Shown here one piece after another: positions 36,773 to 61,660 of a stretch of DNA of 64,000 nucleotides. The notes beneath the pieces were generated by a model. The model saw only the letters and a program-made list of their open reading frames with translations, had not been told where the DNA came from and searched no databases. The stretch lies in NCBI GenBank assembly GCA_965235115.1, contig OZ249444.1:5394001-5458000 (forward strand), in the 5' to 3' direction. How positions within the stretch are numbered: the first letter of the stretch is position 1; each line of letters opens with the position of its first letter. This DNA comes from Laetmonice hystrix (Eukaryota). Both the position numbers and the translations under genes were made by a program.

Positions 36773-38121
36773 GTAACCAATGGTCTACGAGCAAAGAGTT
36801 TATGGCGGGGTTTAGGACTGTGATGTAACCAATGGTCTACGAGCAAAGAATTTATGGCGGAGTTTAGGACTGTGATGTAACCAATGGTCTACGAGCAAAG
36901 AATTTATGGCGGAGTTTAGGACTGTGATGTAACCAATGGTCTACGAGCAAAGAGTTTATGGCGGAGTTTAGGATTGTGATGTAACCAATGGTCTACGAGC
37001 AAAGAGTTTATGGCGGAGTTTAGGATTGTGATGTAACCAATGGTCTACGAGCAAAGAGTTTATGGCGGAGTTTAGGATTGTGATGTAACCAATGGTCTAC
37101 GAGCAAAGAGTTTATGGCGGAGTTTAGGATTGTGATGTAACCAATGGTCTACGAGCAAAGAGTTTATGGCGGAGTTTAGGATTGTGATGTAACCAATGGT
37201 CTACGAGCAAAGAGTTTATGGCGGAGTTTAGGATTGTGATGTAACCAATGGTCTACGAGCAAAGAGTTTATGGCGGAGTTTAGGATTGTGATGTAACCAA
37301 TGGTCTACGAGCAAAGAGTTTATGGCGGAGTTTAGGATTGTGATGTAACCAATGGTCTACGAGCACAGAATTTATGGCGGAGTTTAGGATTGTGATGTAA
37401 CCAATGGTCTACGAGCAAAGAGTTTATGGAGGAGTTTAGGATTGTGATGTAACCAATGGTCTACGAGCAAAGAATTTATGGAGGAGTTTAAGATTGTGAT
37501 GTAACCAATGGTCTACGAGCAAAGAATTTATGGAGGAGTTTAGGATTGTGATGTAACCAATGGTCTACGAGCAAAGAATTTATGGCGGAGTTTAGGATTG
37601 TGATGTAACCAATGGTCTACGAGCACAGAATTTATGGCGGAGTTTAGGATTGTGATGTAACCAATGGTCTACGAGCAAAGAATTTATGGAGGAGTTTAGG
37701 ATTGTGATGTAACCAATGGTCTACGAGCAAAGAGTTTATGGCGGAGTTTAGGATTGTGATGTAACCAATGGTCTACGAGCACAGAATTTATGGCGGAGTT
37801 TAGGATTGTGATGTAACCAATGGTCTACGAGCACAGAATTTATGGCGGAGTTTAGGATTGTGATGTAACCAATGGTCTACGAGCAAAGAATTTATGGAGG
37901 AGTTTAGGATTGTGATGTAACCAATGGTCTACGAGCAAAGAATTTATGGAGGAGTTTAGGATTGTGATGTAACCAATGGTCTACGAGCACAGAATTTATG
38001 GAGGAGTTTAGGATTGTGATGTAACCAATGGTCTACGAGCAAAGAATTTATGGAGGAGTTTAGGATTGTGATGTAACCAATGGTCTACGAGCAAAGAGTT
38101 TATGGAGGAGTTTAGGATTGT
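36773..38121. repeat. 52-bp minisatellite/satellite array, 26 copies
   Basis: Unit GTAACCAATGGTCTACGAGCAAAGAGTTTATGGCGGAGTTTAGGATTGTGAT; first unit at 36773 and last at 38073 (exact 52-bp period, no spacers). Confidence 0.98.
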
Positions 38122-38489
38122 GTAGAGCTCTTCCGGGTTTCCGTTTTATGAGTAAAACTTGGTTCATTAAAAATATAGCGTTGCCGATTCACCTTGAGAT
38201 AACTAACAGAAACTGGTTATAGAAACACCATTATGTAAAGGGACAGGGAGATTGAAAGAGAGATGCAAAACAACCAGGTTGAGCAATCGAGCTTATGACT
38301 GTCAATTCAAAGGATTATTAGACTATTAGACTATTGTCAAACTTAATTTATTAAAAAGGGAATCTAATATGCAATGTGCTTTCGTACTTCTTACTTTCCA
38401 TTGGCTTTCACCAATATCGAAACCCGTTCAAGTTACGATGGGTTTGAACTAAAACCAGGAAAGGAATGATTATTTATAATAAACCTACC

Positions 38490-38592
38490 TCAGTAATAGT
38501 TGCAGATGTCGAAGCAGTCACTGTAGGACTTGCGCTCCTCGTACATACACAGTCCAGTGCAGAAGGCAGAGGCTCGCTCCTGGTAGTCAGTG
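38490..38592 (-). CDS. Last coding exon of the proneuropeptide: TDYQERASAFCTGLCMYEERKSYSDCFDICNYY*
   Basis: Branch-like CTGAC with acceptor GTTTTCCCACAG; strongly C/G-ending codons; C-x3-C-x10-C-x3-C; TGA followed 1 nt later by the donor G|GTAGGT. Confidence 0.85.
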
Positions 38593-41500
38593 CTGTGGGA
38601 AAACGTCAGCCGTGTCAGAACATTTTAGGCTACCTTATGACCATTCGTGTTAGGGTGACGGAATGGGATAGCAAGACACACCAATTTCAATGTTCAGTGA
38701 TGGATTGATCAAATGGAGATTCATCTTCAAGTTTGACCTGCTTCTGATTTTATCAGAACGTATTATTCAATCGGTTTTATGAAATTGACAATCCTGTTTG
38801 AAATTTACATACATCTGAAATTGTGTCTTACCTTCCCGTTTGTTTCTGAGAATTGTAAGATGGTCTAATAATGAAGGTCTACATTTACATAGTGAGGCAT
38901 TGCTTTCTAAACAAGCCAGACGCCATAGTATCAGAACACACGCGAAAATAATAATAAGAAGATAGAAAATAAAAGGGCAGATAGACTATAGAGATCTACA
39001 GATACAGATATTTCTGTAAACCGCGTTAAAAGATAAAGTCTAACAATTCCCTGTGTATTACCTGTGGATCTTCTATAATTTGACTTTTAGCCAATATTAT
39101 TTTCAATTATAATCCCTATAATATGTCAGAAATCGATCAAAATGAATCGAATATAGAAGACAGAAGTAGACGTGTCTGTCTTCTCTTTCGATTGTCCCAG
39201 ATTAGGTTGATAGTACTTGAAGCATTGTCTTCACGTTTTGACTGATTTTCTTGTTGAGCGATAAAAAAACTACTGAACCCTACAATTATGGCTGCCTTTA
39301 GCAATATAATTATTGCTATGACGCAATTGCTATGTCAGAAGTAGAAAAGCTTTTAACTGGGATGAAAACATAAATGTTTGTACTTCCTTCTTTAAACCCC
39401 AAACAACATAAAATCCTGTGTTTTGACACTAGAGGGCGTGAAGAAAATAGTGACGTTAGAGAAAAGCAACAGACGGTTACAACCGTTACGACGTCGACAT
39501 AGACACAAGTCTACCGTATACAGGACAGTCGTTCCTAACCCCTATGTTACGGCGAGAAATTTTAACCACCAAGCCATGTTGTGGGCCTTATCAAAGATCA
39601 GGCCCCGGGATTTCAAAACTTAATCTGTTACTTAAGCTTAAAGGTTTAACGCTCCTGAATGGCTGGACTAAGCAGACCAGCTAATCGGAAGCGTTAAGCT
39701 AAAGCTTGAGTAACAACTTAGGGTTTCAATATCAGGCCTCCTAGATTTTTCTCATTCATTTAATCGCTTACAATAAATAAATTTGAGTCGCCGCGGCAAA
39801 AGGTTAAAAACCACTGGGATATAACCATAACACTGAAATGAGCAGACTAAGAATTGTCGACATCCATCCGAATAAAGACAGCCAGGGTTGCTCCCTGTCC
39901 AATCATTTGGTCTCAGAACTGAAACGATGATATCCACATCACTGAATCAATAAACAGGGAAGAATTAGACAACGGTAGACAGCACGAAATGAAGGATCTC
40001 CCGCGATTCCCTAACATTACAGACATTCCTTACTCCAGTAAATTATCGTCGATTAAAAGTACCAACAAACAGTGTCCCGCACTTAGAAATAAATACAGTG
40101 GGTTCCTATTCAGTGAATGACAGGAGACAAAATCTATTCAGATGGAGTTTTTACAACCCGACTGTGCAAGTAACTATAGTTCTCTGTAGAAAGAGAACCA
40201 GTGTGGCTGAAATTAGGGCTAACATGAAACTGGCCTTAACCTAGCTTTAAGAAGGCCCTACACACCCTATGGCTAACACCAATCGATTTGTCTCTGCTCT
40301 TCGAACCCTGCACATCTTCACCAAGCAAAATTGAAACACATCGATTTTTTTCATGCCACTATAAGACATATATATATAGAGAGAATCTGACGTCCATGTT
40401 ATCATTTGTGGCCCCTATAGGGGGTTTGTATGACGTGTTGGTTCGAATGGTGACGTAAGAACTCGAATGCTACGTGATAACCTTGTGATCACGGAAGTAG
40501 CGTGACGTCATAGATTTGGCTTGGACGCAATGCGGGTTTTCTGTCCGACTAGCCCCTAAGAGACCAGTAATCAGAACCCCTAAAGGGGCCTCAATGATCA
40601 TGTGAAGAAAATTAAAGGGTAATCAAAATTAACTTACAAACTCCCGCTATGAGGCAGATTAAGGTGAAAAGTAATTAGTCGAAAGCAGTATTCGAAAGTC
40701 TAAAGAGAGAGAGAACTACGACACAGTATTTGACATACCTCCTCCTTTTACGTCTATCGGGATTTGGAATATAGTAACGAGTGTGTGTGAGCCAATTAAA
40801 TCCATGCCTCGCAAGACCAAAAAATGGCGGTTCTCAATCAGCACATTTGGTGTAACATTGAGGCTAAAACATTGTTATAATCTTTAGTGACGCTTCATGA
40901 GCAAACATTCAACCGTCCTAAAAGTACTTGGGTAAATTTACTTTGACTAGAGCCTGAAGTAATGATAGAACAATCCGTAACAAAAGATAATTCATTGCGG
41001 CACACCATTGATTAAATTATAAAACATAATCCGAATGGTATCGTATACTTTAGATAGGAACGCACATGATGTATCCGTTCAACAGCGTCTCTAAGGACAG
41101 CTGCTATAGTTTACGGATAGTTTGAATTATGTGCAGCTGCTATAGTTTACGGATAGTTTGTGCAGATGGATACTACATTAGGATGATTAGTATCCTGTTA
41201 TTTAATGGTATCAGAAGAGAAACAGCAGTGGATGTATTTTGTTGATGATTTACATAGCACGCATTGTCTGGAGTTCTATCTAATAATGCCGAGACGAAGC
41301 GCAAGTTATTTTTCATCATAGTCATGATCAGCAGGCAAGTTGCATGAAGGTTTAAAAAAAATCATGTTTTACTGCGCAATAAGGTATCATTAAATGACAT
41401 GACGGCTAAATCAGTTTGGGTTATTCCTTTGACGGTGAATGATATTATGTACATGGAGTTATCTACGCCGACTATCTGTGTGCCGACTTTGGGACCAAAC

Positions 41501-44500
41501 CTGCCTTTTCTATAGACTGCCTTGTGGCCTACAGATGGTTAAAACATGCAACACCCGAGTGCAACTTACAAGCTTCCGTTGCAAGGCGGGGACGAATGGA
41601 AACAATTGAAACAGGTTAGGATGTGGAATTGAAGAACTGAACGATGAAATGACTAGCAGGAATTTTTTGTGAGGAGCTCCTACAATTTGGAGAACAGCCG
41701 ATGGCATAAAGTACTAACTGTTTCAAAACTGTTTCATCAGGAGATGAAGAGTTTCAGATTGGAGTTTGGAGCTAAATATAATCAAATCAAAATTTGTAAA
41801 AATAATCGGGCCAAAGTTAACGTTGCTATCGTATATTGAGTAAAAATTGTTGATCCTAAATGAATCCTAAATATATGACAACTAGACATGTGAACAAGCC
41901 TAAGTGAAGTGTTAACAGAAATTTTTTTAAAGTGGACATAAAAATTATAGTTATGTGAATTATTTAAATTCTTAGAACATGTCTACAAGACCGACTATAA
42001 CAACAATGCACTTCACCTAAAGGAAACACACTTAAACGAACACTAATTCGATTAAAAACATATTCACACTCAAAAAATTCAACCCTTTATAAATGCGTAT
42101 TCAATGAACGAACGGCCTCATCTACGTCTAAAAGGGAACGCGCGCGACTCTAATACCAATACGAATATTGAGGGTGGGAGGGTGTTCATCACATGCATGC
42201 CTAGTAGAGTTACCTCTAACCTATATACCAGACCTATTCCAACTAACTGATGGTCTGGCTGTAGACTCGGTATAACCATTTGGTCATAAGAAACACATAG
42301 TCATAATGGGTATATTATGTGAATTGAATATTTCTCGACCTTGCTGTTTTGGATATGGTTGTTTCTGTCCCCTGATCAAGAAGTTTTCAGTCCGGAGTTG
42401 TTGTTTTTTTTGGTGGGGGGGGGGGGGGGGTTCCTCTCAAAGTGACCCTGACCTAAAATCAGCATGATAATTTCCTGACATTGTGGAAAGTCCAGCGAAG
42501 TTAGTGGCTTCTGGTATTGTTGGTTTGTCCGAGTCATAGTGTTGATCACAATTGGTATTCTCGGCACTGCCGGACCTTTTCCGTGTGACTGCTCGCCTTA
42601 CATAGTTAGCCCCTCAAGCCATACTTCCCGGCCTAATGCGATCGTTCTCATGTGAATAGACAGGAACTTCCGTTGAAACCGAATGAGGGAAGCGGTGATA
42701 TTGAGTTACGGTTCCCTGGACGCCAGGTATAGGTTAGACTTCCGGTTTGTCTAAACAACAGTTCGGGTAAAGACATCAGCCTTTTAGAGGTCCCGGAAGT
42801 GATAATGTTTGATATACGGTGTTTTGACGTTATGACGAGGGGCGAACAATAAAGGCTGCGCACGCGCAAATGAAGGAGAAATGCGGGCACTTCCCGTCGA
42901 TCAGGTTTTGATGTCCTTTTGGAATTAAGCTTCGTGATGTACTAAGGTTGGGCCTGGCGCTGGGCCCATATTGTGTCTCTACAACAGGAAATGTGCTGTT
43001 CTTCTTGGTCATTACACTGTATAAAGGGGAAGGTTGTTCACCACAATAGAAACACGTGATTTTCAATTAACGATGTTCATTAATTAAAACGATTTCCCTT
43101 ATCGTTCGTACCGCTCACTAATTGTTTCATTTCTGATTTAAATGTCCAGCGATGTCTGCCATCGGTTCTTTTTATGTGAATCGCACAGTACTCGGAAAAA
43201 GCAGATATTTTTAATTCAGAATTGAGGTAATTGAGGAAGGAAATAGTTCATTCAATCTCGTGGACCACAAAAGGGTGGTATCGATTGGGAGGATACCGGA
43301 TACAGGTTGTAAGGATTGGGGCTGTCTTACAAAGTGACTTAAATGACACCTTATTATAATAACAAGATTGCCCTAGAGACTAAAGGTCAACTTCTGTAAC
43401 CTAGAGGGGCTTCATAATTCATACTTTGCGGGGGCAGGCGGGTATGAGTGGCAGGCCACTGAATACCAAAACCTTAATTGTGGGCCAGGGTCGACTCATA
43501 CTCGTCTATAGGAGCGCAATCTACCTTTTAACGTCTTGTAATGTTTTGAAAGTACATTGTCTGCTTTTCGAAACTGTCGTTGGTGTTTTTCGGGACCGCC
43601 GTGATATGACCCTGGCTGTTGCAAGGCGTAAAACACCAAATACCCACCCACCCATCCTTTTTCCGGAGGGAGAGCCATATTTTCATTATGAAAATAATGA
43701 CCAAAAATGTTGATATCTTTTCCATTTCTCAATAGCTGTTAGGTCTAAAGAATCCTTGATTCATGGACCTTGGAGTACCTTTAAAAGAAGAAGAATAGGA
43801 AGGAGGAAGAAGAAGATCCTAATGAGCCAGATCAAGCGGATTTATTGACTTGGCCCTCCAATTAGTTAACTGGATGGGTTGATTGTCGTGACCTTGCTGC
43901 AGTACGTGACTGCCGTGGACACGATACGGCAGGCCGGCGATTTTTTCCCAACGTGATGCAACCACAGCTCTGAGTAAGCCGCTTGCAGGTCCCCTCAGCA
44001 ACCATCGAGTCTTCTCATTAAACCGGACAGGAGTCGTTTGGTTAAGTACCCCCGGCGTCTCCTTCAATTTGATTAATGTATGGGAAGACGCCTTGGTGCT
44101 GTGGTGGTAGGGGCGTAAGGCTGGAACCGGCTGGTTTGGGGGCTTGGCCCAGGCTTGGCCCACGCAACGATCGAGTGTCTGCCTCTTCCATCCAAGCAAA
44201 GCCTCTGGAGCCTTCAAGTTGATCATTACGAGGAATCGGGCTCAATTAGGACATTGAGGTATTAGGTAAATACCCGAGTCTTCCTTGAAAACCCGAGGGA
44301 AATATTTAAGGATACTGAATTACCTATTCGAGGTAGGTTTTGCAGGGGCGGATCCACGAATTTGGAAGTGGGGTCGTTGGGTTAATTCAGAAAGCTCTAT
44401 GGGGGAAAGAGAAAAAAGAGAGATAAATTGACGCCAGAGGGGGGTCCGACCCCCTTGACCCCCAGGTTCCGCCACTGTTTTGTGTTTAAAAGTAAAGGAA

Positions 44501-47500
44501 TGTGGATTTTGAAAAGACTAAGCAATACACGCACATGCATGCCAAGGAGAATGAACGCCTTGAATCTAATTATACCTCCAATTTGTGTCGGGTCGCCTGC
44601 ACGTGCTGAACCTAATGTCGCCTAAGTCACGTCATGAAAATCGAAGTCTTAAAGAACTCCCCTATTACTGGACGGTAGAATATCACATAACACGATTGGA
44701 GGAATTTGTATGTGCTAGTCACGCCAGGCCCCACTTTCTGAATCAAATGTACCTGCAGCGTGGACGAGTTTATTATAGTAGGCTTTCATGGCTGTCTTTT
44801 CTAATGGGCGATAATAAGAGGGTTAGCGACTTCAAGCCAGAGGCCTGCTCTGTTATTTGAATCACTCTGCACCAGTGGGGACACTATGTCACCTGTGATT
44901 TTTGTTTGTTACCCTCATTTGTCATCCTAATCAGGAGAAGCACGTACAATGCTTGCCGTCTGAGGGCAATCTTGAGGGGCCTTTTAAGTTTGTGCAAGCA
45001 GAAATAGTGTGGCTATTGGAGTATTCTGCCCGCAATCCTTGCATGGATAAGTGTTAAATATTTGAGTGTGGATTGTTGGAAGAGTGTTTATGGGAACCTT
45101 GACCTGTACGGGGTTGTGGGAGGTCAAGGGGTCATGGCAGCTGTCTACTCTACTTAGAGAATCTAAGGTATGACCACAAACAGACCATTCACAGATAGTG
45201 CCTTCTTTTATCGTTTTTGTATTCGGTATGGCCACCCGCAACTTTACAAGCCAACATTAATTTTGTAAAACGTTGGATCAACAATCGAAACACCTACATT
45301 GTACTGACAGAGACACAAGTACACAACTGCGCCACATTCCTGTCCATGGGGCGTTCTGACACGATCTTCTATAGTTCTATACATGCTGATATTGGAAATT
45401 ATCCATGCCAGCTTTCCAGGCCGCTCACGAAGTTATGTTAATACTTTGTAATGACGATGGCCCAAAATCTACCCGTCTCTCTTAGTTTTTCCTCTCTCAC
45501 TCAGTCGCACCAGCGCGCAATATTTCGTGTAAACCTAATGAAGATATTGTACTGCAAACAAAGCATGCTACTAACTACACTGCCGTCGAATGTATTAGAC
45601 TAATCTAGGGAACACCGATTACAGGTCATTCGATCCCGAAGACGGAGGAATGGGGAAAATTGAGAATATCATGAAAATCTTATACTCACTATCTCTTCTG
45701 CCGAGAACCAGAAATGTCCGAATTCCTTTGGAGTGCCTGAAACGGTAGGGAAATAAGAAAATAATGGTCATGCAAGGCTAATATTATCCAAAAATAACTT
45801 TCCTACCACTATGGCTTTTTTTTGAGAAAGTCAGGAAGAAGTCTTTCTGACTTTATAGACTTATAGATTTCGGAAAAGTGGTTAACAAAGTGTGGGTGTG
45901 ACTCGCAGGTATTGCTAACTGTTCACTTCCAGAGACCTTTATCATGGAAGGTTTCAGAGAAACATTTTGATTGATGATTCAAAAGATCAAAAACGGAGGT
46001 GAACAGTTCACTTTGGAGCCCTGTGCCAGACCCGGCAGAGATGACAGGGCGTGCATGCCGGAGGAGTGTTTATGACATTGTCAAGCGTCGCAACAAGAAG
46101 ATTTCGCAAAAGTGTTATGGTTTATTGATCAGTATATCATTAAAATTTGCAAGCCTTCCTCGGGGCACAGACATTTTTGCAAATAACAAGGAAAGGCAGG
46201 AAATTGAATGAGGCTTTGAGGTGAAGGCCTTTGTGGGGAGGGCAAGCAAGCCTTTGGATTATCAAAAGCTCCACTTTGTTGCTGAGGGCCTTTCCCGGAG
46301 AACAATGTTGAGCGATTTTGTATTATAAAGCGATACTCGGGCACCGGTTGGGAATTATGTATGTATGAGGATTTTATCCGCTTGTAGCCAGTCATCCGCC
46401 GTTTGAATAGTGAACGAGTCGTCTGGAAACCGCTTCATGCAGAGGTACATCTTTCTGTAGCTCTACATGCATTATACAGTGAGTTGACTGCTGTGTGTGA
46501 CCTCACGGCTATATATGGACAGCCNNNNNNNNNNNNNNNNNNNNNNNNNNNNNNNNNNNNNNNNNNNNNNNNNNNNNNNNNNNNNNNNNNNNNNNNNNNN
46601 NNNNNNNNNNNNNNNNNNNNNNNNNNNNNNNNNNNNNNNNNNNNNNNNNNNNNNNNNNNNNNNNNNNNNNNNNNNNNNNNNNNNNNNNNNNNNNNNNNNN
46701 NNNNNNAATTGTCCATAGCTGCTGTGTATACCTAAAATATATATAGTAACGGCAGAGACCTGACAAACATGTCTGAGGGAGACTGAAGTAATTGGTATAC
46801 GATGGAAAGCAGCCGTAGGCACTAAGCTGGAAAATGGAGGAGCTGTATGTACTGAGATTGTCGCATACATAGGCGAGTCAGGCTGAAACACGATATGTGG
46901 AGAGAATAGAGGTACTACTTCCGCTGTCTGCTGGAAACTTATTAGGAACGCCCAATTAGATGTCTCTCCTCTGTAAGTATACATTCACACAACGTTTCTT
47001 AATGGACCCGACAAGTTAGGAAACAGTCCACTCTGTTGGAGAGACTTTCATAGATTGAGTCAATGCAGCAGGAGGATGGGAAAGGCATGTAACCAAACTG
47101 CTACTAACTACTTCTTGCAGGCAGTCACCCAGGAAACATTAAGACTAATCTATCATATTTTTTTTACCTTTTTAAAAGAAATAAATAACATAGAAAAAAA
47201 CTACGCTAGTTTCTAGGATCACGACATTGACTGCTCCCTTGTCGATTACTGCCTCCTCAACGTTCCAACCAAGTTTTATATCACCCGTAAAGTGCAATGT
47301 CGTGTCCGCCGTGTGGCGATGGAATTTGATCGTTTTGCGACAAGTATTGATATTCAGGTGGGTTCGTGCATATTGAAGACGCCAGAGCTTGTCAGCGTGG
47401 TGCATATACTTTGATCAATAATTGTAATACTGTTAGAAAACCCCGGTGATTTGAAGTACAATATCCCATATCTTCCGTATGTGTTAGGCATTGTTAGTTT

Positions 47501-50500: not shown

Positions 50501-53500
50501 GGGGTGATTGCAGCCCAGAACGAGGGTAATCTCATGCGATTCATCCCTGCCCAACGAAATTTACACCCGGAGCACTGAAGTCGCCAGCCGGGCCTTTTTG
50601 AAGTGGCGTATAAAAGTAATGTTTATGTGCTTCTGCTGCTGTACTTGTGTAGCGATTAGCAAACAGGAAAAGGTTTTTAAAACAGAAACATAGAGGGCAA
50701 TGATATAGTACAGACCCCCGACTTTCTTTCAAACTTACGTTCTTGCTTACGCTTTGAAAAGTTAAACGCCCCTGATTGGCTGGTCGAAACATCAGAGGCG
50801 TTAAGCCTTAGCTTAAGCACGAACTTAAGATTTTGGGGCCTAGGATTTAGGGAGTATGTAGTTCAAGATGACGTGTCGAGGGCGGCAGGGAATGAGAACG
50901 TCAGCGGGCTCCGTCACGTGGTTCTGAATGGACCAACCATAGGGATGGAATAACGAGACAGCGGAGAATCATCATTTGGTGATCTGTTTGTCTGCCGGAT
51001 GGCTCTGTGTTGGCACATCGGTTGGAATTCCATTCCCGTTACAGGTCCCTTGTGGCTCACTACTGATTATGAGATGTATTGTCGACGCGTAGTAATCTGG
51101 GCTTTCCGTGCGGGGCTGAAGCCGCGCCGCCCGAGCACAAATCCAACGGACTACAGCGACCTCTTGCGGTGAGGACGTGGTTGCAGATTACCTGCGCAGA
51201 AATACACGCAGCTTCCGTTTCAGCCGCCAGGAAAAACAAGAATAAGATGTACATAAATAAAACGACTCTGATGTAGGCTAGCTAGATGACGGTGGTAAAA
51301 CAAACCGTATGGTCAAATTATTCTGCTTGCGTGAACACCAGTGCCTGTGTCTTTGTATGTTTATTATTTTTTGTGTTGTTTTTGGTGTGTGTGTGTTTTT
51401 TAAGGTTGTTGTCCGCCTATTGTGAGACCGACGTTGCTGTTGGGAGTGGTTGAGGACAATGATTAAGAGAGACAGATTGAGGGCAGTACCCGGCCGTATT
51501 GATGTGTGTGTTTTTTTAGGTTGTTGTCCACTTGTTGTGATACCGACGTGGGAAGAAGAGACTTAGGGTTGTTTTTGTCCTGGTGTTGGGAGTGGTTGAG
51601 GACAATGATAAAGAGAGACAGATTGAGGGCAGCGGCCGGCCGTATCGATGTGTTACATGGCCATCTCTGGTTACTCAAGGGGATCGGCTGTGATCAAAGT
51701 CATAATTAGTTTCACGGGATAAGAGACTATTTCTCGGACAATGCAGCGACTATCACATTCTACCAGTGCATGAAAAATTTTAAAAATTTAAAAATTACTG
51801 AATAAAATAAAATAAAGGGGGCGAAGTTGAAGACACCGAGAGGGGTGCCCCCCCTTTGGGTTTATAATTACGCAGCAATATAGCCCCGGGCAAAAGCTCG
51901 TTTATATATTTTTTTATATATGTATAGGATCGCTTTATGTCGCCGACCAGATCTGTCGCTGATGAAGGAAGACGCTCCACGCAGCCTTTACTAAATGATG
52001 CGTTCTCTGGTCGAGAATAATTTCTTTCTCCCCTGCCAGAAAGATAAAAATAAACCACAAAAAGTTTGGCTGAAACCAGGCACGACACGAGCGGAGTGGT
52101 TGCGGCAAGATAAAACGTTGAAAGCGGCCATGCATACCAACGTTCATTTTATTCTTCGGTCTTTTAAATGAATGAGTATTCAATCAGCACTCCTTCATTC
52201 TATGGGGATAAAAATACGGAAATAAGACTGCTGAGTTCTGTTCTTGCGGAAGGCCTGATTATATCTCGCCAAACAAAATACGATTTAACGTTTCCATAGC
52301 AATCATTCCGTCGTGAGATATTAGCTACGTATGGTTAGAAAAATATAACGTAAGACCAAGCGCGTTAGATCAATCATGAAACGTGATGTTAGCGGAATGG
52401 AATTATGATTTTTGTACGTCAGGATTATTATGTTTTAGAGATACAACATGATAGCCAGTCTGTCTTGTACATGTACCTGGTAATTCGGCAGTCTGGAAAT
52501 ATCCTACCCGAAGTTCTGGTAGGCCTACAGATGTATATAGTTTGGCATCCAGACGTTTCTCGAAAATATTTCAAGGCCTCAATAGGGGAAGTGGAGGCCC
52601 TGTAGGCCTAGGCCTAGGCCTAATTGTGATAGCTTGTTGTATAGCCTATAGTGTTCAAGTATGGTAGGCAGGATGTATCTCCTGGCTAATAGTGTTTAGA
52701 GGTTGTGTACTTATATGGTTTATTAACAATCCGGATGTCCCTCCTGCAGATTAATGAAATCTGACCTTTTGTAATTAACTGAGCACATAATGGGATTCAT
52801 ACTCCGTCATTCCGAGACTTTCCCCCGATCCTAATCGTAAACGTGTTTGGGTTCGTTATTAACTGAAAGCGGCTCTTGAGAGTGCAGACGCCTGGCGACG
52901 ACCGAACGAGGGGATTGATTGATCCAGGCCGATCTCCGGGATCGTTCGGGGTAAAGTGCTCACCCCAACGGGGCGTGACAGTCGGCGATCGCCCCCTCTG
53001 ACAATCCGGATCGGTGACGTCACAGCCTTTACTAACAGCCACCGCCTACGTCACAAACAACGCCCACGTCACGATATCCACCCACTCACCGCTCGGCTTC
53101 CAATTATTAGTCACGCTCAGCTTACCGCCTAAAGGCAAGCCCACTTTTTATAGACTGACCTTATACATGGAAGTAACATAAAACATAAAATAAAGGCATC
53201 AACGACCTCCCAGGGCCTACTGTATGCCAGGACAGGCCTCCTAGGGCCTACTCCGTATCGTGTAGGCCTATAACGATATAGCTTCATGATTAAAAAAAAG
53301 GAAATTAAAGCAAATGAAAAAGACCAGCGCGCTTCAGATTATAAGAACTCCTGAGGGCTGGGCCGTATGGCGTCTGAAGAGCTGTGTATCTTTGATAATT
53401 ATTCCCTCGAGGGATCCCGGAATGGAATGTTTATGAGGCACGTCTTGGTTTCACCTACGGGAATCGATGGCGGAGTCGTATGGTCTGTAACACAAACTCC

Positions 53501-56500
53501 TAATTTTACATTGATATTGTTTTAGTTCACCTGTCATAAAATGATAAATGCTGCTCGAAATTTGAGCTGCACAACAGATCGATTGTACAAAGATTGCGAC
53601 AAGATGCTAGTGAAAGTTACCTCGGAACGCTGTGTCGGTATCCCGGCAAAACTTTGATTCTTGCTTAAGTTTACGCTTAAGGCTTCCTGTTGGTTGTTCT
53701 GCTGAGACCCGCAAATAAGAACCCTCAACATTAAGCTTAAGCACGATCCAAACGGATTCCGGAGTCATGGCGGGGATGGTGCTTTCTAAAACTAACTAAA
53801 TCTGTCTCGAATTTAACCGACAACAAGAGGTAATAGGATCATTCCGACCAAGAATAATCTTTTCGCCCCGACGCCCAACAGACAGTTATCACATCTAATT
53901 TATTCCACCTTGCCTGTACTGCGTCATTGTTCATTCTCCAGAACGTTTCTGGATGGGTGGGTAGTTGAGGAGTGAGTGGATGGGTGGGTTTTAAGTGGGT
54001 GAGTGGGTGTTTGTTCCCAGCATTAAGCCGTAACTTGTTGAAGGAAGTTGCTTTATCTGACACTACACTTTTATCGATTTACTACTATAATCTTTCCATG
54101 ATGTTCATGTATGAGATATTTACTGAGAGTCCATCTCCTGACCTTTTCCCTTGTGTCTCTCCACGTCAGCTATTGTGTCATGTACCGACACTGGGTCTCT
54201 ACTCTCCTGTCCAATTCAGTAGTTTCTGACACAAGTCGTAAAGGTGTACAGGCCAGTCCATTGATAATGTAGAAACTGCAACTGTATACAAAAATGCCTA
54301 TCTTTGCTGTTACTAAGTAACTGTTACATATCGAAGTTGAAAAATGGTGCGAGTATAGGATCTTGCCACTTTTTTCTACCAGATTCATAATCTGTAGAGG
54401 CTCACGGCTTGTGAACCGTTAGAGTCGTTTTGTCTCCCGCCGGCTCTGGATATGAAATGGTCTGTGTTTGAACTCCCCCTCCGTTTACATGGAACCTTTT
54501 AAAGAAAACTTATCCCTCAAAGCTCCACACATTCCAGGTTATTAAATCTTGGCTTCCTGTTTCCGCAGTACGGAAGTGCCTGTAAAGGCATGCTGAAATA
54601 GTTCTGTCCCCTTTTTTAACTTAAAGCGATCCGAAACCGCCACTAGCAATAGGGCCCATGGATAACCATGGTATAGTGCCTTTTACCTGCCACCATCTAA
54701 TTCCCACAAAGTCTGTGTGTTAAAAGTAATCCCCGATAGAAACTGACAGTTGCCCGTTTGCTCACGGCGTCCATCTTGCCGAAATTCACTGCCGTGAGAC
54801 CTTAAAAAATGGCGTCCCTAGAGCCTACCCCATTCCCCCATCACTGTGTTGGTCAACCATCTTCACGGACACTATGTACAATAATGGTTACTGGTGAACT
54901 CGGACCATGGTTATCTCGGCCCATGTCGATTACATGACTTCATGTCCCATGCGTGCCCTGTCCCAGGCTCCATGCCTCACCCGACACCCGAGTCAGGTGG
55001 TCAAGAGTCTCAAGTCAACAACGGGTAGCACTCCCTTGCTCCCGGCGGGCGTGCACTGGTGGTTGGACGGGGCCAGACATGCCAATTTGGTCGATCGACA
55101 ACGTAGTGAAAAATCTCTTACCGGGCGCTTAAACGAACAGAAACTCGTCGCAATACCCTCCAACGCATGAAATGGTGGCTGAAAGCTATTATTTATACGG
55201 AGAATTGTCAACTAGAGAATGAAATGTACACTGGTTGGGTCATGGATGGAGTCTGACAGTAGTGACAGACTACGGCAGTCTACGGCCGGGGACATGGCGT
55301 GCACTGCCACTGTCAAAGCGTCGGGCTACCGTTCAGCTAGCACACCCAGGCATATCTTCACGAAGGATCAGCACCAAGTCAGTGGTGTGGTTAGACCTGC
55401 TGATCGGTCTCCTAGTACTATGACACGGATAATCTTACTCGCAGCTCTCAGTCTAGACTCTCTGACTACCTTGTATCCTCACCCGATCTGACAGCTGGTA
55501 GAAACTCGCGGCTCTGGCGACGTCACACTTCCGGGTGACCTGACTGTTTTTGATTGGCTGAATCAATCTCCCATGTGATAATGTGATGTAAAATGGCGCC
55601 GAGTTCATTTCTCGGCTAGAGGTACGGTACTCGTAGTTTAAGGTTGGCATTCTCGTTTATGTAAAACATATTGACCTGCATTTATTGCTGATGTTATTCT
55701 TTATTGTATAAGGCATATGGGAAGGTATAAGGTAGCTGGATTGTTGCATTTGGCTTTAAGATGTGGCTTAAGCTAAAGCTTAATGCTTATGATTGGGTGG
55801 TCTAAACCAGTCAAGTCCGTCAAGACAAGCCAGTCAGAGCATTTGACTTGGGCTTAAGCAGCAACTTAAGTGTTGAAGAAAAGAAACCCCAGTCATTCAG
55901 AAGCGCTAAGCTTGAAGAAGAACTTTAGTTTCCAAGCCCGTAAAACAGCGAGGGTGTCAGTCACCATCCGATGTTAACGAAATATATCTGTGGTGTTGTG
56001 CTAGTATAGAATTGGTGCCGATTTCACGGTCAAGGGTCACAGTCGTAGTCCAGAGAGGAATTCGTTATCATTCTCAGGTGGAATTGGTGCTCAACCATGT
56101 GTGTCTGGTTGTAGCGTTGTGCTCATTGGGCATTGCCCATGCGCAGATAATAAACACTGCCTTCCCGGCAAGCCGTGCGAGACGGCCGCAGTGACGGCAT
56201 CCCTCATCACTCATTGGTGGATTTCTTTGTGTACGCGTCTGCGCAGTGAGTCCCTGACGTGGCTTAGCGATGATCCCTGAGTGGTTTTACTTGTAGATTA
56301 CGGATTAGCATGGTGGCCAACACGTGGATCTTGGACTCTTCGCTTCCAGTGCAATGGGTGAGGGTAGGGGGTGGGGGCGGAGGCTTTCCATGCACGGGGA
56401 AGGGAGAGAGAAGTGCCACACATTTGCCACTTGATTTTCCTCGGTCGTTGCCTAAGCCATCCTTTTTTCTCCCAACCCCTAGTTTTGCGCCAATGCTTTG

Positions 56501-59500
56501 TTCCAAATTGAACTGTATCCTATTCATTTATAAATTCAAACGATTATGAGATTATCAACCGTATAACTTGAACATGTTATGAAGTCAGCCCAGAAGGTAG
56601 TTTGATTCATTTATTATGTTAATTTAATATCGATGAGTCGATCAGTATGCATGAAATGTAAATGACGGGGGTGCATGGGGTTGGGGTGGGGGTGGGGTGG
56701 TACATGGCGCTGATGAACACTACCAGAACCATCCAACATGGTGCTACGTTTTCAGGGTGACGTTCCCAATATTGCATCTGATAAAGAACTGCTAAAGGAA
56801 GTCAACTTAACAGAACGTCTTTTATCTCCCGCCATGTCGTTTGGCTGCTGCGGAACTGTTAGCATTTATCAAATTTAAAGGGGCTCATATGGAACATGGA
56901 ATATGGAACAGTACCATATGCCGATGTTCTTTCCTGAAAGGATAGAGGTACTGGAGAAAAAACAGTTCCATCTTTAAACTTGTGTCGATTTTACACCCCT
57001 TTTTTCAATTGGAAATGTTTACGTTTGCTTAATACATACCCAGTATAAACGTAACAATCATAGGCAGAATTGTCTTTTATTATCCTTTATAAATAATGTT
57101 CACAATGTGCCCCTTTAATGCCCAATATGCTAATCATGCCTCAGCTTGGTGATTAGTGGGCGTTCACGCGTGTCATACGTAAACTCTGACAGGCAGAATA
57201 CATCAGCCCCGCGGTTGAACGCAGTTGAATGGACCCTCAACCTCATAAAACAATGCCACAGGCGTCACACTCACGGAAAGCTTGGTCCAAGTATTAGCGC
57301 CAGGCTGACGTTATTGGTCGGTTTATAATCCAACTAACCAAATTTATCAGCCTCTTGGTGGCTTGTTTGAGGGTAACGTTTATGGATGGCGTGTTGTTCA
57401 AGCGACAACCGGATATAGTTTAGGGTCTTCCAAAAAAAAGGGAAAAAAGATGTAGTACTCCGTTGTTCCTCCTATATCTCTGCACATACCTGCTATGAGG
57501 AGAGCACTTTATTTTTACTGCTACGTGACATATTATAACAAGTATTTGTTGGGCTGACTTCCATCAAATACCATTGAAATTGAAACAATCCGATGACATA
57601 AATTGGGACCTCTAGTTTTTTTTGTTATTTTTATTAATTTTCGTCCTTTCTTGTCACTTTCTGGCCATGTATTTATCAAATATTACTAACTTTTTATTTT
57701 ACCCAGTTATCCGTTATTATGAGAAGGGGGGGTGTTTTCTTTAACCCCGTAGACAGGGACAGCAAGTCGATTCTTCAATAATCGCGCACACCCCCATATA
57801 CTGTCACATTCGATGAGTGCAGTGCATGTGCAGTGGTATCATTTCGTAACAGTTAGCTGTCTGATTCGAAAGGTCATAAGATAAATTAAAGAAATGTTCA
57901 TTAACACTGTTCAGGGACACCACGGTAAAATTATGGGGTCATACATAATATATCGTGATGATGTACTGGTATTTGTGAATAAAGGAGAAGTCTATACCAA
58001 ACATGCTTTATATTAATCTTTTTTAATTGGGCTACAAGACCAACAATGCCTCATGGTCATGACAGTCCACCATATATCAGCATTTCCAGGAAGCGGGCCT
58101 GGGTATAGACTTAATATATGACGCCGGTGTAAGATTGTTGAGGCTGGTGGCCAGGTGCAATGCATCACTTCTGTTCGATGAACTTGTAAGTAGTACAGTA
58201 AGAGTGAAATATGCAGTATATAGATTGGTATAAGTAGTATTACAAGAGTGACATTTTGTAACATGTAGACTTGCGGATGGACTTGTTAGTAGTATACCAA
58301 GAGTGGAGTGTGCAGCAGGATTCAAACAAAACGAATCAATAACTGACAGAAATGTCGAGCTGGCTCACTGGCGGGGACCGTTTTTTTCCTTTTCCTCAGA
58401 ATCCATCCTCACTATATCGATTTCATACTGAACGGCTTTATGAAAACGCAAATTTCACAGCAGGAACGTTCCCGTTATCATTGGAGAAAGCCGCTGGCTC
58501 ACATTTGATATGAAACATTCCATTAGCCTCTATTATTTCTGATCTGACCTTGATGGAAGCTGATAAACGTCTGCATTTTTGGAAGTCTGAAGGCAGGCCT
58601 GAGAACCGCCTGCAATGTGTTAGGTAGCGATAACATGGGTTGAGGTTCGGGTAGGGAGAGACCGAACATAAAGACCCTCTGGCCTCCAGCAAGGGGAAAA
58701 AATCCTTATCTCGCGAAGCTGTTTCTGCAAGGGCGGTCTTCGCTTTAAGATAGCGGCACACTTGATTTAAAGGCAGATTTGATTACTTTGAAGCGTACAG
58801 GATAGTTCATATTTCATTATTATTACTACGTAGAAATAATTGATTCTCCCTAACTGACGTAGCGTGAACACCATGAAATTGAGAGTTTGTTTTAAGTGTT
58901 ATTAATCAGTGTAAGAGATCAAACGCATCAGCCAGACAATGCGAACGTCCACATTTAGGCCATTAGCGAGGTACAGCCATTACCCTGTACGTGACGTTCA
59001 GGAGAGGATCATAATAATAAAAAGTGAAATATTATCCCAGTCTGCTCAGACATTAGTTGATGGATCTTTTTTCACTTGTGCAAGACAAGATTACTTTTCG
59101 CACCAGTGGTATATGGTGGTGTAAATTGAATTTCGGTCCAGTGGAAGAGTATAGTGACAGTGAGTATAGCTGTTATGTGGCATGGCTTACGTACGATGTG
59201 AGGTATAGTCAGATCTGTGATTTCTAAATTTTATTTTTGAGGTTGTCTTTGCTGCCACTTTCATTTATTCAGACACAGTGTTTACCCCCCCCCCCCACCC
59301 CACCCCCGCGGCCTTGGTTGTCCAAGTCGGAACCACTAGATGGGGAGGTGGTTCCGACAACAGGACGGGGGGACAAAGAGCTCACTGTGGCGGCTTAGCA
59401 TAGCGAGCGCCTAAAGCCACTCGCCCTCATCCCCCTCCCTTCTCCTGACTTTGAGGTGTTGAGGGTTTGAACATGCACGACATGGCTGATCGATTGGGCG

Positions 59501-61560
59501 TAACTCTTTACTAATCGTAGCGTTTTGTTATGTAGTCAAACGTGACACCACTGGGTCGAAATCTACTGACGCCACACGAAAACGAGACTTAGTAGTATAG
59601 CGAAATGGTCTGCGTAGGAGCATGTAATACTGACACTCTCTGGTCGCTCATACAGTGGGTATGATGTTACCCAAGCTCTAATGTACGAAAGCTTCATGAT
59701 TGTTATATTACAGGGCGTAGGAATGAAGCTTTACTTTCACACATTTCAAATAAGGAGGTTATTTCGGATAGTCTTTCAGGAAGATAGAATGGCATACCTT
59801 TACAATCAGGCCTATAATTTGTCAACAAATATGCGGGGGAAAGTATATGCTGAATCCTTTAACGACTTCGACAAAGCTTTGCAGTACTTTATCTTCCTGT
59901 ACTTCAGTTTATATAGTCTCACCACGAAATCTAGCTCTTTGCCAATCACGTAGCAAATCATCAAAAGGCCCTTTAATTAAAGTGGGGGAGCCAAAAGTCC
60001 CTTTAATTAAAGCGATTCTTAATCAGGTTAACAGATCGACAGTAATCAATGATCGCAAGAGGTCAATGCTGCTGACACGTATGGAGGACATTGACAGTAT
60101 TTATTCGGTGTACCGACCGGTACATAGTACTGACCAGTGTTAGGAACTCGGAAAACATTTATCTACAGCGCCAAATACCTGCTCCTGTGGCAACTGGAAT
60201 GTTTGGTGTTTAGGATTGGGCTGCCATTGGTGGCTAACGGCGAGTGTAATGTGAAGGTTCGATTCGAATACGGAAGGTCTCATATATCCTGCATGGAAAC
60301 CTCTGCAACAAGCCTTTTCCGTTTTTTGTTGGGCTTTCCATTTTTTTAGGGAAGGGGGATTTACGTCGAACCCGTCAAGTGGATATCCCGCTGTAGTTTA
60401 GCGTGTCGTAGAGCTACGCCCCGTCATGTATCTGAGGAGAGTGGGATTATAAAAAACCATTACATCGGTGTACCCTGGTTTCTGTAGATAAGGCTCTCTG
60501 CGCGGGACGTGGCCCACCCACTCCACCGCGCGCAGTTACACAGCTCGCAGCGCCATCAGGCGGGGCAAATAGGAACCAAGCCATCAGACTCCGCCTTTTG
60601 GAACAGATTGAAAACACATTCATCCGAATACGTCCACTATTCTCTTCGACAAGGCAGACTCCCCCCTGGCAGACCAGGGGAGCAGGATGACAATACTTGG
60701 CAGCCGTCTTTCCCTCATGGGTATTAAACGTGTACAGTTGCGGCGTTGTGGCAACGTTGCATCAGGACAAAAACGCCCAGCATGACTGCAGGAGCGTTAT
60801 CCAATAATGCCAACGCCAAAATGATTTGACAGGTTTCAATCAGCCTTCGTATACTTGGCTGCACCTTTTCCAGTCACATTATCTACGATACGGTTGAGTC
60901 ATATCTTTTGTCTTTTGTTACGACAAACGAGATTCATCATCACATTTTGCATCTGAGCAGGAAATATTTTATGACAGCGACGTAGGGTCAACCAGATTAT
61001 CAGCTGCATGAAGGGCATTTTTAGACATCGATAGGTGAAACTGGTATAGTGCATGCTTTGACAATAACGACATGTGGTATGACGCTCAACATGTCTGCCA
61101 AATTAGAACATGACGGCTTAACCCCCCCCCCCTTGAAAAAAAGGGATGTTCAAAAATGCGCGCCTATTTTTGGTAAGTGTGCGAAATGGTAGGAAGACCA
61201 TGATAGTTAAAATTATGCGGCAGTGGAGTCCAGCTGGATAATGAGAAGAAATGCTATAGGAAAACATAGAAATGTCACAAGTAGTGATGTCTTGTAAAAA
61301 CCGGGCGTTGTGCAACAAGTTATAGCCATCCATCGCCCGTCTCTGCGTCAAATGACAAGAGCTAAACGAAGAAAGTATACATCGGAATTCGTGACCTGCA
61401 ATTTGTCGAATCAAGAAAAGGAAACAAAAAGAGAACAAAATACAGATCGTATTGGTGGTCTAACCTTGTGGGGTAAGAAGGCTCCCTCGACCTGGAGCAA
61501 CGAAGTTGCCACATAGACGACGAAACAGGCTGCAAGAAAGTATCCACCTAACTTGTTCAT
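38490..61560 (-). CDS. Small secreted 4-Cys proneuropeptide gene (QERAS-like); exons 61465-61560, probable microexon 38832-38845, and 38490-38592; about 70 aa
   Basis: A signal-peptide exon and a mature-peptide exon on the same strand, joinable in frame via the 14-nt exon: MNKLGGYFLAACFVVYVATSLLQVEG/AFLPHKK-QTGSTDYQERASAFCTGLCMYEERKSYSDCFDICNYY*. Linking exons across about 22.6 kb is an inference. Confidence 0.65.
38832..38845 (-). CDS. Candidate 14-nt microexon (KQTG-S), or a 33-nt version 38832-38864
   Basis: Strong donor GAAG|GTAAGA and acceptor CAATTCTCAG; phase 0 to 2 is exactly what is needed to join the other two exons. Confidence 0.45.
46525..46706. other. Assembly gap (182 N)
   Basis: Run of N. 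Confidence 1.
47582..48129. mobile_element. Non-autonomous DNA transposon with ~32-bp imperfect TIRs (Harbinger-like)
   Basis: TGGACGTGATCTACTTGCGTTG.GATG.CTTCC and its reverse complement at 48097-48129; flanks TGA/TTA; internal CTTACGAG/TTCCGA sub-repeats. Confidence 0.8.
51380..51655. repeat. Local tandem duplication (about 125-bp unit, second copy with an insertion)
   Basis: TGTTGGGAGTGGTTGAGGACAATGAT.AAGAGAGACAGATTGAGGGCAG...CGGCCGTAT.GATGTG occurs twice. Confidence 0.85.
61465..61560 (-). CDS. First coding exon of the proneuropeptide: signal peptide MNKLGGYFLAACFVVYVATSLLQVEGAFLPHK
   Basis: ATG in ACAATG context; n/h/c regions with a V-E-G cleavage site; phase 0 donor AAG|GTTAGA; TATA box upstream. 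Confidence 0.75.
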
Positions 61561-61599
61561 TGTGACCTCGGCTCTGCACTCACACACGACTCGCTCAGT

Positions 61600-61660
61600 T
61601 ACTCCAAACCTTGGCTTTCCTTGTGCCTTTATAACAAAAGGTGGTTGTTGCGTCAGCGAT
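61600..61660 (-). promoter_or_regulatory. TATA box and CRE half-site promoter of the secreted-peptide gene
   Basis: Minus-strand TATAAA at 61628-61633, about 70 nt upstream of the ATG; CTGACGCA at 61649-61656. Confidence 0.6.

What the first reader, a model, noticed from the sequence alone, without database searches (positions are those of the whole stretch)
38490..61660. Hidden 23-kb gene for a tiny 4-cysteine secreted neuropeptide (QERAS-like), not represented in the ORF track
Seen: a TATA/CRE promoter and clean signal-peptide exon (61465-61560), a strongly codon-biased exon (38490-38592) encoding TDYQERASAFCTGLCMYEERKSYSDCFDICNYY*, and a 14-nt microexon (38832-38845) with exactly the phase needed to join them. 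Inferred product, 70 aa: signal peptide, AFLPH, a KK dibasic site, then a Gln-starting (pyroGlu-capable) peptide with C-x3-C-x10-C-x3-C, the spacing of disulfide-stapled helical hairpins. Known (from memory, needs checking): an orphan proneuropeptide named QERAS is catalogued in the Platynereis dumerilii neuropeptidome, and I know of no receptor or function for it. If this is not an annelid, the locus extends the range of an orphan signalling system. An intron also starts 1 nt after the stop codon.
Basis: partly seen in the sequence, partly recalled or inferred. Interest (0 to 1): 0.85.

Follow-up and report, generated by a model that had tools for sequence, protein, structure and literature searches.

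The report
Annelid QERAS neuropeptide precursor gene

Summary
The signal-peptide exon (61560-61465, minus strand) and the peptide exon (38592-38490) are real and belong to one gene. The peptide exon is 31/33 identical to the Platynereis dumerilii QERAS proneuropeptide. The first exon matches the N-terminus of the QERAS precursor from the scale worm Sthenelais (both in PMC3890597).

The 14-nt microexon is not supported. 63 such minimal AG/GT bridges lie in the intron. With it the product lacks the R-x-K-R-Tyr site that is invariant in the aligned precursors.

Homology to the Sthenelais cDNA reveals two missed exons: 48863 (or 48860, a tag|aag tandem acceptor) to 48819, and 45736 to 45690. The four exons give a 95 or 96 aa precursor, 82% identical to Sthenelais. 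It has a signal peptide, a propeptide, RQKR, then a 34-aa peptide that starts with Tyr, not Gln.

The assembly gap lies inside intron 2 and hides no coding residues.

The split Tyr codon (TA|C) is at the same position in Capitella and in another annelid contig. AlphaFold2 predicts a helical hairpin (pLDDT 90.8).

No RNA run was available, so splicing rests on cDNA homology.

The family and its annelid range are already known. The receptor and function remain unknown. Earlier notes of this scan on other parts of this genome also called it an annelid.

The parts
61627..61655 (-). Putative core promoter: TGACG half-CRE (61655-61651) and TATAAAG (61633-61627), 67 nt upstream of the ATG
   Evidence: Read directly from the sequence. 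Function is inferred only; a 5-nt half-site is common by chance.
61465..61560 (-). Coding exon 1, 32 codons. It holds the signal peptide (about residues 1-26, predicted cleavage after VEG) and the start of the propeptide (AFLPHK); donor AAG|gttaga
   Evidence: The first 12 residues are identical to Sthenelais EST FR770837 as printed in PMC3890597 suppl. 10.
48864..61464 (-). Intron 1 (12.6 kb)
   Evidence: Bounded by gt at 61464 and by tag|/aag| at 48866-48861.
48819..48863 (-). It has a tandem tag|aag| acceptor, so it starts at 48863 or 48860; donor AAG|gttagt; the length is a multiple of 3
   Evidence: tblastn with the Sthenelais mid-region, E 0.005 in the window. Sequence and splice sites. 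In-frame joined model.
45737..48818 (-). Intron 2 (about 3.1 kb), containing the assembly gap 46525-46706
   Evidence: The protein alignment is continuous across the exon 2/3 junction, so nothing coding is hidden in the gap.
45690..45736 (-).
   Evidence: tblastn 12/13 identical to Sthenelais, E 3e-4. Sequence. It is the only minus-strand match in the window to the pattern R-x-[KR]-R + T[AT] + GT[AG]. The exon end has the same form in Capitella.
38593..45689 (-). Intron 3 (7.1 kb). It contains the rejected microexon and a very high-copy repeat at 43422-43815
38490..38592 (-). Coding exon 4: the third base of the Tyr codon, 33 codons of the QERAS peptide, and the TGA stop (38492-38490)
   Evidence: 94% identity to Platynereis QERAS, E 3.6e-14 against 1.84 billion proteins. 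Synonymous codon changes outnumber non-synonymous ones against four other annelid sequences.
38832..38845 (-).
   Evidence: 63 equivalent 14-nt bridges lie in the interval. With it the product lacks the R-x-K-R-Y site that is invariant in the aligned precursors.
38347..38489 (-). Probable short 3' UTR, with a GTAGGT donor-like motif (38488-38483) and AATAAA (38352-38347)
   Evidence: Read. Whether the donor is used is untested. Capitella has TG|GTAGGT at the equivalent place.

Best explanation
The locus is the orthologue, in an annelid genome closest to the scale worm Sthenelais, of the QERAS proneuropeptide gene.

The gene lies on the minus strand. It has four coding exons of 96, 45 or 42, 47 and 103 nt, separated by introns of 12.6, 3.1 and 7.1 kb.

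The 95/96-aa prepropeptide enters the secretory pathway through a 26-residue signal peptide (inferred). A subtilisin-like proprotein convertase cuts it after RQKR (inferred from the R-x-K-R-Y site invariant in the aligned precursors). This releases the C-terminal 34-aa peptide, Tyr-Thr-Asp-Tyr-Gln-Glu-Arg-Ala-Ser...Cys-Asn-Tyr-Tyr.

That peptide is predicted to fold as two antiparallel helices. The Cx3C pair of one helix would face the Cx3C pair of the other, which would let two disulfides staple the hairpin (fold predicted, bonds inferred).

It most likely acts as a secreted signalling peptide on a still unknown receptor. This rests on its listing as a proneuropeptide and its strong larval-to-adult expression in Platynereis. 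No function has been shown.
For: Sequence and frame of the four exons, all with ag/gt boundaries, join to an open 288/291-nt CDS.

The joined product is 82% identical end to end to the Sthenelais EST-derived precursor. It aligns with 17 further family members.

Platynereis QERAS is the top hit of an exhaustive search, at 94% identity. 21 of the 22 hits at E up to 0.001 carry this peptide; the other is a low-complexity repeat protein. The four hits that carry names are annelid (Platynereis, Urechis, Capitella, Paralvinella).

R, K, R, Y before the peptide and 11 peptide positions including all four Cys are invariant.

The acceptor ag|C-ACN-GAY and the preceding exon end KR+TA|gt are at the same place in the Capitella genome. 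The acceptor is also the same in a second annelid contig.

There are 12-15 synonymous-only against 4-7 non-synonymous codon differences.

The AlphaFold2 model has mean pLDDT 90.8, with helices 2-19 and 23-30.

The gene is single-copy in the 627-Mb genome apart from one weak paralogue-like exon.

Platynereis QERAS RPKM rises to 213-299 at 4-10 days (PMC3890597 suppl. 11).
Against: No transcript data exist for this species. Two run searches found only DNA runs, and the contigs laid on 38300-44200 show no joints. All splice junctions therefore rest on homology to cDNAs of other species.

The Sthenelais sequence was read from a machine-read supplement and may contain small errors.

The choice between the two tandem acceptors of exon 2 is open.

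Signal-peptide cleavage, convertase cleavage, disulfide pairing and neuronal expression are inferred. I found no mass-spectrometric evidence for the QERAS peptide in the texts held, and no receptor is reported in any paper found.
Confidence: 0.88

Rival explanations
1. One reading: exon 1 joins a 14-nt microexon (38845-38832) and then the peptide exon. This gives a 70-aa precursor cut at KK and a Gln-initiated, pyroGlu-capable peptide, either as the main form or as an alternative isoform.
For: The segment has a ctcag| acceptor, a |gtaaga donor and the required phase. It is one of only four short bridges that pass a stricter splice filter.
Against: Chance supplies 63 such 14-nt bridges. The product would lack the R-x-K-R-Tyr site invariant in all 17 aligned precursors and the propeptide seen in Sthenelais. 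The true exons 2 and 3 explain that cDNA fully. One of the other three filter-passing bridges is merely the tail of exon 3.
Confidence: 0.03
2. The gene model is right, but the peptide is not a neuropeptide. It would be a secreted defence or structural peptide of the alpha-hairpinin type: disulfide-stapled helical hairpins, which in plants act as antimicrobials or protease inhibitors.
For: The Cys pattern fits the alpha-hairpinin 4C motif CX3CX4-20CX3C (PMC11591084 Table 1). A helix-loop-helix is predicted. Weak structural rows include Luffin P1 and Ole e 6. The neuropeptide label rests on precursor architecture only.
Against: I count the mature peptide as net acidic (six Asp/Glu against three Arg/Lys), unlike typical cationic antimicrobial peptides. 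Its near-invariance across annelid orders suits a receptor ligand better than a fast-evolving defence peptide. There is no sequence similarity to any solved structure, and the fold matches are not significant (E about 10, Z below 5). The architecture of signal peptide, spacer, R-x-K-R site and a single conserved peptide is that of a prohormone.
Confidence: 0.1
3. The locus is an unexpressed relic (pseudogene) whose exons only look intact.
For: No RNA evidence could be obtained.
Against: All four exons are open, all six splice sites are canonical, and the start, stop, TATA box and AATAAA are present. The peptide keeps all 11 family-invariant residues. It is the only full copy in the genome.
Confidence: 0.02

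Closest known systems
QERAS proneuropeptide of Platynereis dumerilii (GenBank KF515937, UniProt V5TE09; Conzelmann et al. 2013, PMC3890597)
   Same: Signal peptide, propeptide, RQKR, then Tyr-Thr-Asp-Tyr-Gln-Glu-Arg-Ala-Ser... with C-x3-C-x10-C-x3-C. 31 of 33 residues of the last exon are identical. The precursor ends right after the peptide.
   Different: The signal peptide and propeptide are unrelated in sequence. Platynereis has an internal KR site and a C-terminal Trp that this gene lacks; here TGA stands where Platynereis has Trp.
Sthenelais QERAS precursor (EST FR770837, aligned in PMC3890597 Additional file 10)
   Same: The closest relative found. It has the same MNKLGGYFLAAC start, the same AF[LI]PHK, SNALQ and LQRNSDISGSRQ blocks, and the same peptide. 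Identity is 82% over 92 aligned positions. It is the cDNA that links all four exons.
   Different: It is a different species. The cleavage site prints as RQRYF instead of RQKRY, there is one residue less at the exon 2/3 junction, and the sequence was read from a scanned alignment.
Capitella teleta CAPTEDRAFT_221017 (ELU15039.1) and Urechis unicinctus QERAS (QUP52033.1)
   Same: Same peptide. In Capitella, the genome checked here, the split Tyr codon and intron position are the same (KR+TA|gt ... ag|C ACN GAY), and a candidate signal exon lies about 10 kb upstream.
   Different: Both carry long C-terminal tails. In Capitella the tail is added by a donor TG|GTAGGT inside the Trp codon. In this gene the stop codon precedes the equivalent GTAGGT, so no tail can be added.
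Alpha-hairpinins (plant CX3C-Xn-CX3C helix-loop-helix peptides, e.g. Luffin P1, PDB 6o3s)
   Same: Same Cys motif class and the same predicted two-helix hairpin. This resembles it in architecture only.
   Different: There is no detectable sequence relationship and the Foldseek E is about 10. They come from plants, are usually basic, and are made from vicilin-like or modular precursors. I do not file QERAS in this family.

Membership tests
QERAS proneuropeptide family (annelids) | Conserved C-terminal peptide Y-T-D-[YF]-Q-E-R-A-S-A-F-C-T-G-x-C-M-[YF]...C-[FY]-D-x-C with four Cys spaced 3-10-3 | tested here: met
   All 11 invariant positions of a 20-sequence alignment are present. 94% identity to the Platynereis type member.
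QERAS proneuropeptide family (annelids) | R-x-K-R convertase site directly followed by Tyr at the start of the peptide | tested here: met
QERAS proneuropeptide family (annelids) | N-terminal signal peptide followed by an aromatic/hydrophobic-Pro motif | tested here: met
   The hydrophobic core and VEG|AFLP align with ADA|LYLP, VEG|FYLS and similar. No dedicated signal-peptide predictor was available, so the cleavage position is inferred.
QERAS proneuropeptide family (annelids) | Intron splitting the Tyr codon before the peptide exon (gene-structure synapomorphy seen here) | tested here: met
   Same position and phase in Capitella (L006) and in contigs L004/L005. Eight genome-derived read-through ORFs all show Ser, from ag|C, before Thr.
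QERAS proneuropeptide family (annelids) | Transcription, and production of the peptide in neurons or neurosecretory cells | not testable with these tools
   No RNA run holds the locus. Only Platynereis whole-animal RPKM values exist.
Alpha-hairpinins | 4C motif CX3CX4-20CX3C with a helix-loop-helix fold | tested here: met
   The motif fits (PMC11591084). The AlphaFold2 model has helices 2-19 and 23-30, pLDDT 90.8.
Alpha-hairpinins | Detectable sequence or significant structural relationship to known members | tested here: not met
   No hit in a profile search of PDB sequences at E up to 10. Luffin P1 appears only at Foldseek E 9.9. The best VIA Z is 4.6, on generic hairpins.

The most novel reading that the evidence does not exclude
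QERAS may not be a single-gene orphan. The same chromosome carries, about 11 Mb away (G000:C10:16435403-16435489, plus strand), a divergent exon with three shared features: the same ag|C acceptor phase, the same C-x3-C-x10-C-x3-C spacing and 9 of the 11 invariant residues. The same G|GTAGGT motif follows it. If it is a working gene, annelids have an undescribed second family of stapled-hairpin peptides related to QERAS. The GTAGGT after the stop codon of the window gene would then be a conserved splice donor, a 3'-UTR intron here and a tail-adding intron in Capitella.
Probability: 0.3. Interest if true: 0.4.

Novelty: new member of a known kind. Interest (0 to 1): 0.25.

Why it matters
For annotation, this is a worked example of a gene that ORF-based and many automatic pipelines miss. 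Its 288 coding bases lie in exons of 42-103 nt over 23 kb, and the correct model came only from cDNA homology.

For biology it adds little that is new. QERAS and its annelid range were published in 2013, including a scale-worm sequence.

Three details are useful. The cleavage-site Tyr codon is split by an intron at the same position in an errant annelid (this genome), in a sedentary one (Capitella) and in a second, unnamed annelid contig. The peptide is almost frozen in sequence, with 11 invariant positions. It is confidently predicted to be a two-helix hairpin.

Together these make QERAS a well-defined, easily synthesised candidate for receptor deorphanisation.

Tried and rejected
- **RNA evidence.** Two searches for sequencing runs (37700-38700 and 38345-38592) found only three runs of one sample, none on record as RNA. 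Laid on 38300-44200, their contigs run colinear through intron and exon with no joints, so they are DNA and say nothing on splicing. I avoided the gap region on purpose.
- **Database labels for the peptide.** Pfam gave no family. A profile search of PDB sequences gave nothing at E up to 10. The ESM Atlas gave no usable hit.
- **Fold matches.** Foldseek against PDB gave nothing below E 5. VIA-align wide gave only generic helical hairpins, Z 4.6 or less.
- **Spurious hit.** P0017, a 1474-aa hit of the exhaustive search, is a low-complexity repeat protein and was discarded.
- **Paralogue exon.** No R-x-K-R+TA|gt exon lies within 20 kb upstream, and the word-based protein search found no homologue. 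It stays unresolved.
- **Same-species protein.** Searches seeded with Platynereis QERAS or with the family profile returned no protein closer to this gene's leader than the Sthenelais EST.
- I did not send the joined 95-aa product to the database tools, because it has no reference form. The joined model was built and aligned only inside scripts.
Full report
**Observation**

On the minus strand, 61560-61465 reads Met-Asn-Lys-Leu-Gly-Gly, then a hydrophobic stretch, ending AFLPHK directly before gttaga. TATAAAG lies at 61633-61627 and TGACG at 61655-61651.

At 38592-38490, after tttcccacag, one base (C) is followed by 33 codons reading TDYQERAS...CNYY and a TGA. These parts of the finding are exactly as described.

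The 14-nt segment 38845-38832 also exists, with ctcag| and |gtaaga flanks.

**Is the microexon more than chance?**

No. I counted every AG...GT segment in the 22,872-nt interval that is open and would restore the frame between exon 1 and the peptide exon. There are 539 of 5-32 nt, and 63 of exactly 14 nt.

Four pass a stricter filter (at least 10 of 14 pyrimidines upstream and a GTRAG donor). One of these four is simply the tail of a real exon.

**What the gene is**

QERAS is a proneuropeptide catalogued in Platynereis dumerilii, with orthologues reported only in annelids (PMC3890597). It is also listed for Urechis (PMC7737342) and Eisenia (PMC5688751).

The supplement of PMC3890597 prints the Platynereis precursor and an alignment with Alvinella, Tubifex, Sthenelais and a leech.
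- The window's peptide exon differs from Platynereis at two of 33 positions.
- The window's first exon starts with the same twelve residues as the Sthenelais EST FR770837.

So both ends belong to one gene, and a cDNA from a related worm links them.

**The missed exons**

The Sthenelais precursor has about 29 residues between PHK and the peptide, and every family member has R-x-K-R-Tyr before Thr-Asp. The microexon model supplies neither.

A tblastn of the Sthenelais middle part against the window found two minus-strand matches, in the right order, between exon 1 and the peptide exon.
- **45733-45695:** LQRNSDISGSRQK, 12 of 13 identical, E 3e-4.
- **48869-48816:** KSNALQTALQALQSK, E 0.005.

Read in the sequence, they are clean exons.
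- **Exon 2:** ttccttag|AAG TCC ... TCA AAG|gttagt.
- **Exon 3:** cgtttcag|GCA CTC ... CAG AAG AGA TA|gtgagt.

Exon 3 ends with TA, and the peptide exon begins with C, giving Tyr.

Exon 2 has a tandem acceptor (tag|aag|). It therefore starts at 48863, giving Lys-Lys, or at 48860, giving one Lys as printed for Sthenelais.

Joined, the four exons are 288 or 291 nt and open throughout. They encode 95 or 96 residues, 82% identical to the Sthenelais precursor over 92 aligned positions, and they align along their whole length with 17 other precursors.

**The assembly gap**

The gap at 46525-46706 lies between exon 2 and exon 3, inside intron 2. The alignment to Sthenelais crosses that junction without any missing residue; the window even has one more. 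The gap therefore hides no coding sequence and affects only the stated intron length.

**Family evidence**

An exhaustive phmmer search with the 33-residue exon against 1.84 billion representatives gave 22 hits at E up to 0.001. Platynereis QERAS came first, at 3.6e-14 and 94% identity.

All the named hits are annelid:
- Platynereis;
- Urechis QERAS (QUP52033.1);
- Capitella teleta (ELU15039.1);
- Paralvinella palmiformis (KAK2146348.1).

One hit, P0017, is a low-complexity artefact. A profile search added more unnamed transcript-derived members.

In a 20-sequence alignment of the peptide, 11 positions are invariant, including all four Cys. In full-length precursors, R, K, R and Y before the peptide are invariant.

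**Gene structure is conserved**

Eight genome-derived ORF predictions read Ser directly before Thr-Asp. This is what a read-through of ag|C gives.

In the Capitella genome the peptide exon is preceded by ttccag|C ACT GAT. A separate exon 1.26 kb upstream ends GAG AAG CGA TA|gtaagt, the same form as exon 3 here. A second annelid contig has gtag|C ACG GAC.

A candidate Capitella signal exon lies about 10 kb upstream, so long introns are normal for this gene.

**Selection**

Against four other annelid sequences the peptide exon shows 12-15 codons changed only synonymously, 4-7 changed non-synonymously, and 71-75% nucleotide identity. This is a coding exon under strong purifying selection.

**Fold**

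AlphaFold2 with the family alignment gives mean pLDDT 90.8. It predicts a helix over residues 2-19, a three-residue turn, and a helix over residues 23-30.

The two Cx3C pairs fall one in each helix. This fits two inter-helix disulfides, though I could not measure distances in the model.

No solved structure is related by sequence. Structural searches return only generic hairpins. Among the small disulfide-rich proteins are Luffin P1 at E 9.9 and Ole e 6 at Z 4.1.

The Cys pattern formally fits the alpha-hairpinin motif CX3CX4-20CX3C (PMC11591084). That is a likeness in architecture, not membership.

**Mechanism**

- *Shown here:* an intact four-exon gene, family membership, a conserved cleavage motif and a predicted hairpin.
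- *Inferred:* signal-peptide removal after Val-Glu-Gly, convertase cleavage after RQKR, release of a 34-residue acidic peptide starting with Tyr (so no pyroGlu), two disulfides, secretion, and action on an unknown receptor.
- *Support from Platynereis:* whole-animal expression rises from 55 RPKM at 72 h to 213-299 at 4-10 days and stays above 100 in later stages up to male epitokes, falling to 21 in female epitokes.

I found no functional or receptor data in the library. I found no mass-spectrometric evidence for the QERAS peptide in the supplement texts held.

**Transcript evidence**

None could be had. Both run searches returned three runs of one sample, not on record as RNA. Their contigs cover introns and exons alike with no joints, so they are genomic. 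All junctions therefore rest on homology.

**3' end**

GTAGGT begins one base after the stop codon (38488-38483). AATAAA lies 140 nt downstream of the stop (38352-38347), so an unspliced short 3' UTR is possible.

In Capitella the annotated model uses TG|GTAGGT inside the Trp codon to add a long C-terminal tail. The motif here may be that donor retained. Because the stop codon precedes it, it cannot change the protein. This is untested.

**Copy number**

A six-frame search of the 627-Mb genome finds the exon once. It also finds a weak second hit on the same chromosome, which looks like a divergent paralogue exon. I could not find its upstream exons or any homologue.

**Verdict**

This is a real gene of an already described annelid-specific family, in an annelid. 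Earlier notes of this scan on other pieces of this genome also call it an annelid. Interest is low to moderate.

Noticed in passing
G000:C10:16435403-16435489 (+), locus L008:1501-1587: A QERAS-like exon about 11 Mb from the window: tgtttcag|C then VTFQDRAQSICIGLCMYHDVRPYDKCLTRCRLG. It has the same acceptor phase, the same 3-10-3 Cys spacing and 9 of 11 family-invariant residues, and G|GTAGGTAAG follows it. No upstream R-x-K-R exon was found within 20 kb, and the word-based protein search found no homologue.
   Followed up: partly
window 36773-38122: A 52-nt tandem satellite, 26 copies, 98% matches, beginning about 370 nt downstream of the QERAS stop codon.
   Followed up: no
window 43422-43815: A very high-copy repeat inside intron 3. 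The summed contig depth is about 55,000-112,000 against about 50 around it, with many loose ends at 43591-43654. No tRNA was found in the window.
   Followed up: no
window 48861-48866: Tandem acceptor tag|aag| at exon 2. The two choices give Lys-Lys (a dibasic site) or a single Lys after AFLPH, so alternative splicing could decide whether a short N-terminal peptide is released.
   Followed up: no
window 13346-16387 (+): A 1014-codon open frame in a purine-rich, G+C-rich stretch (AT skew 0.52). It has Arg/Ser/Lys-rich segments and no Pfam hit. It is probably a large exon of a low-complexity nuclear protein.
   Followed up: partly
window 5136-5783 (+): An open frame with a Laminin_G_3 / concanavalin-A-like lectin domain, E 4e-18, probably an exon of a neighbouring gene.
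   Followed up: partly
locus L006 (Capitella teleta KB294061.1), about 11381: The annotated Capitella QERAS gene reads Asn-Trp then TAG if unspliced. The gene model instead splices at TG|GTAGGT to add a 170-residue tail. Short and long products from one gene seem possible.
   Followed up: partly
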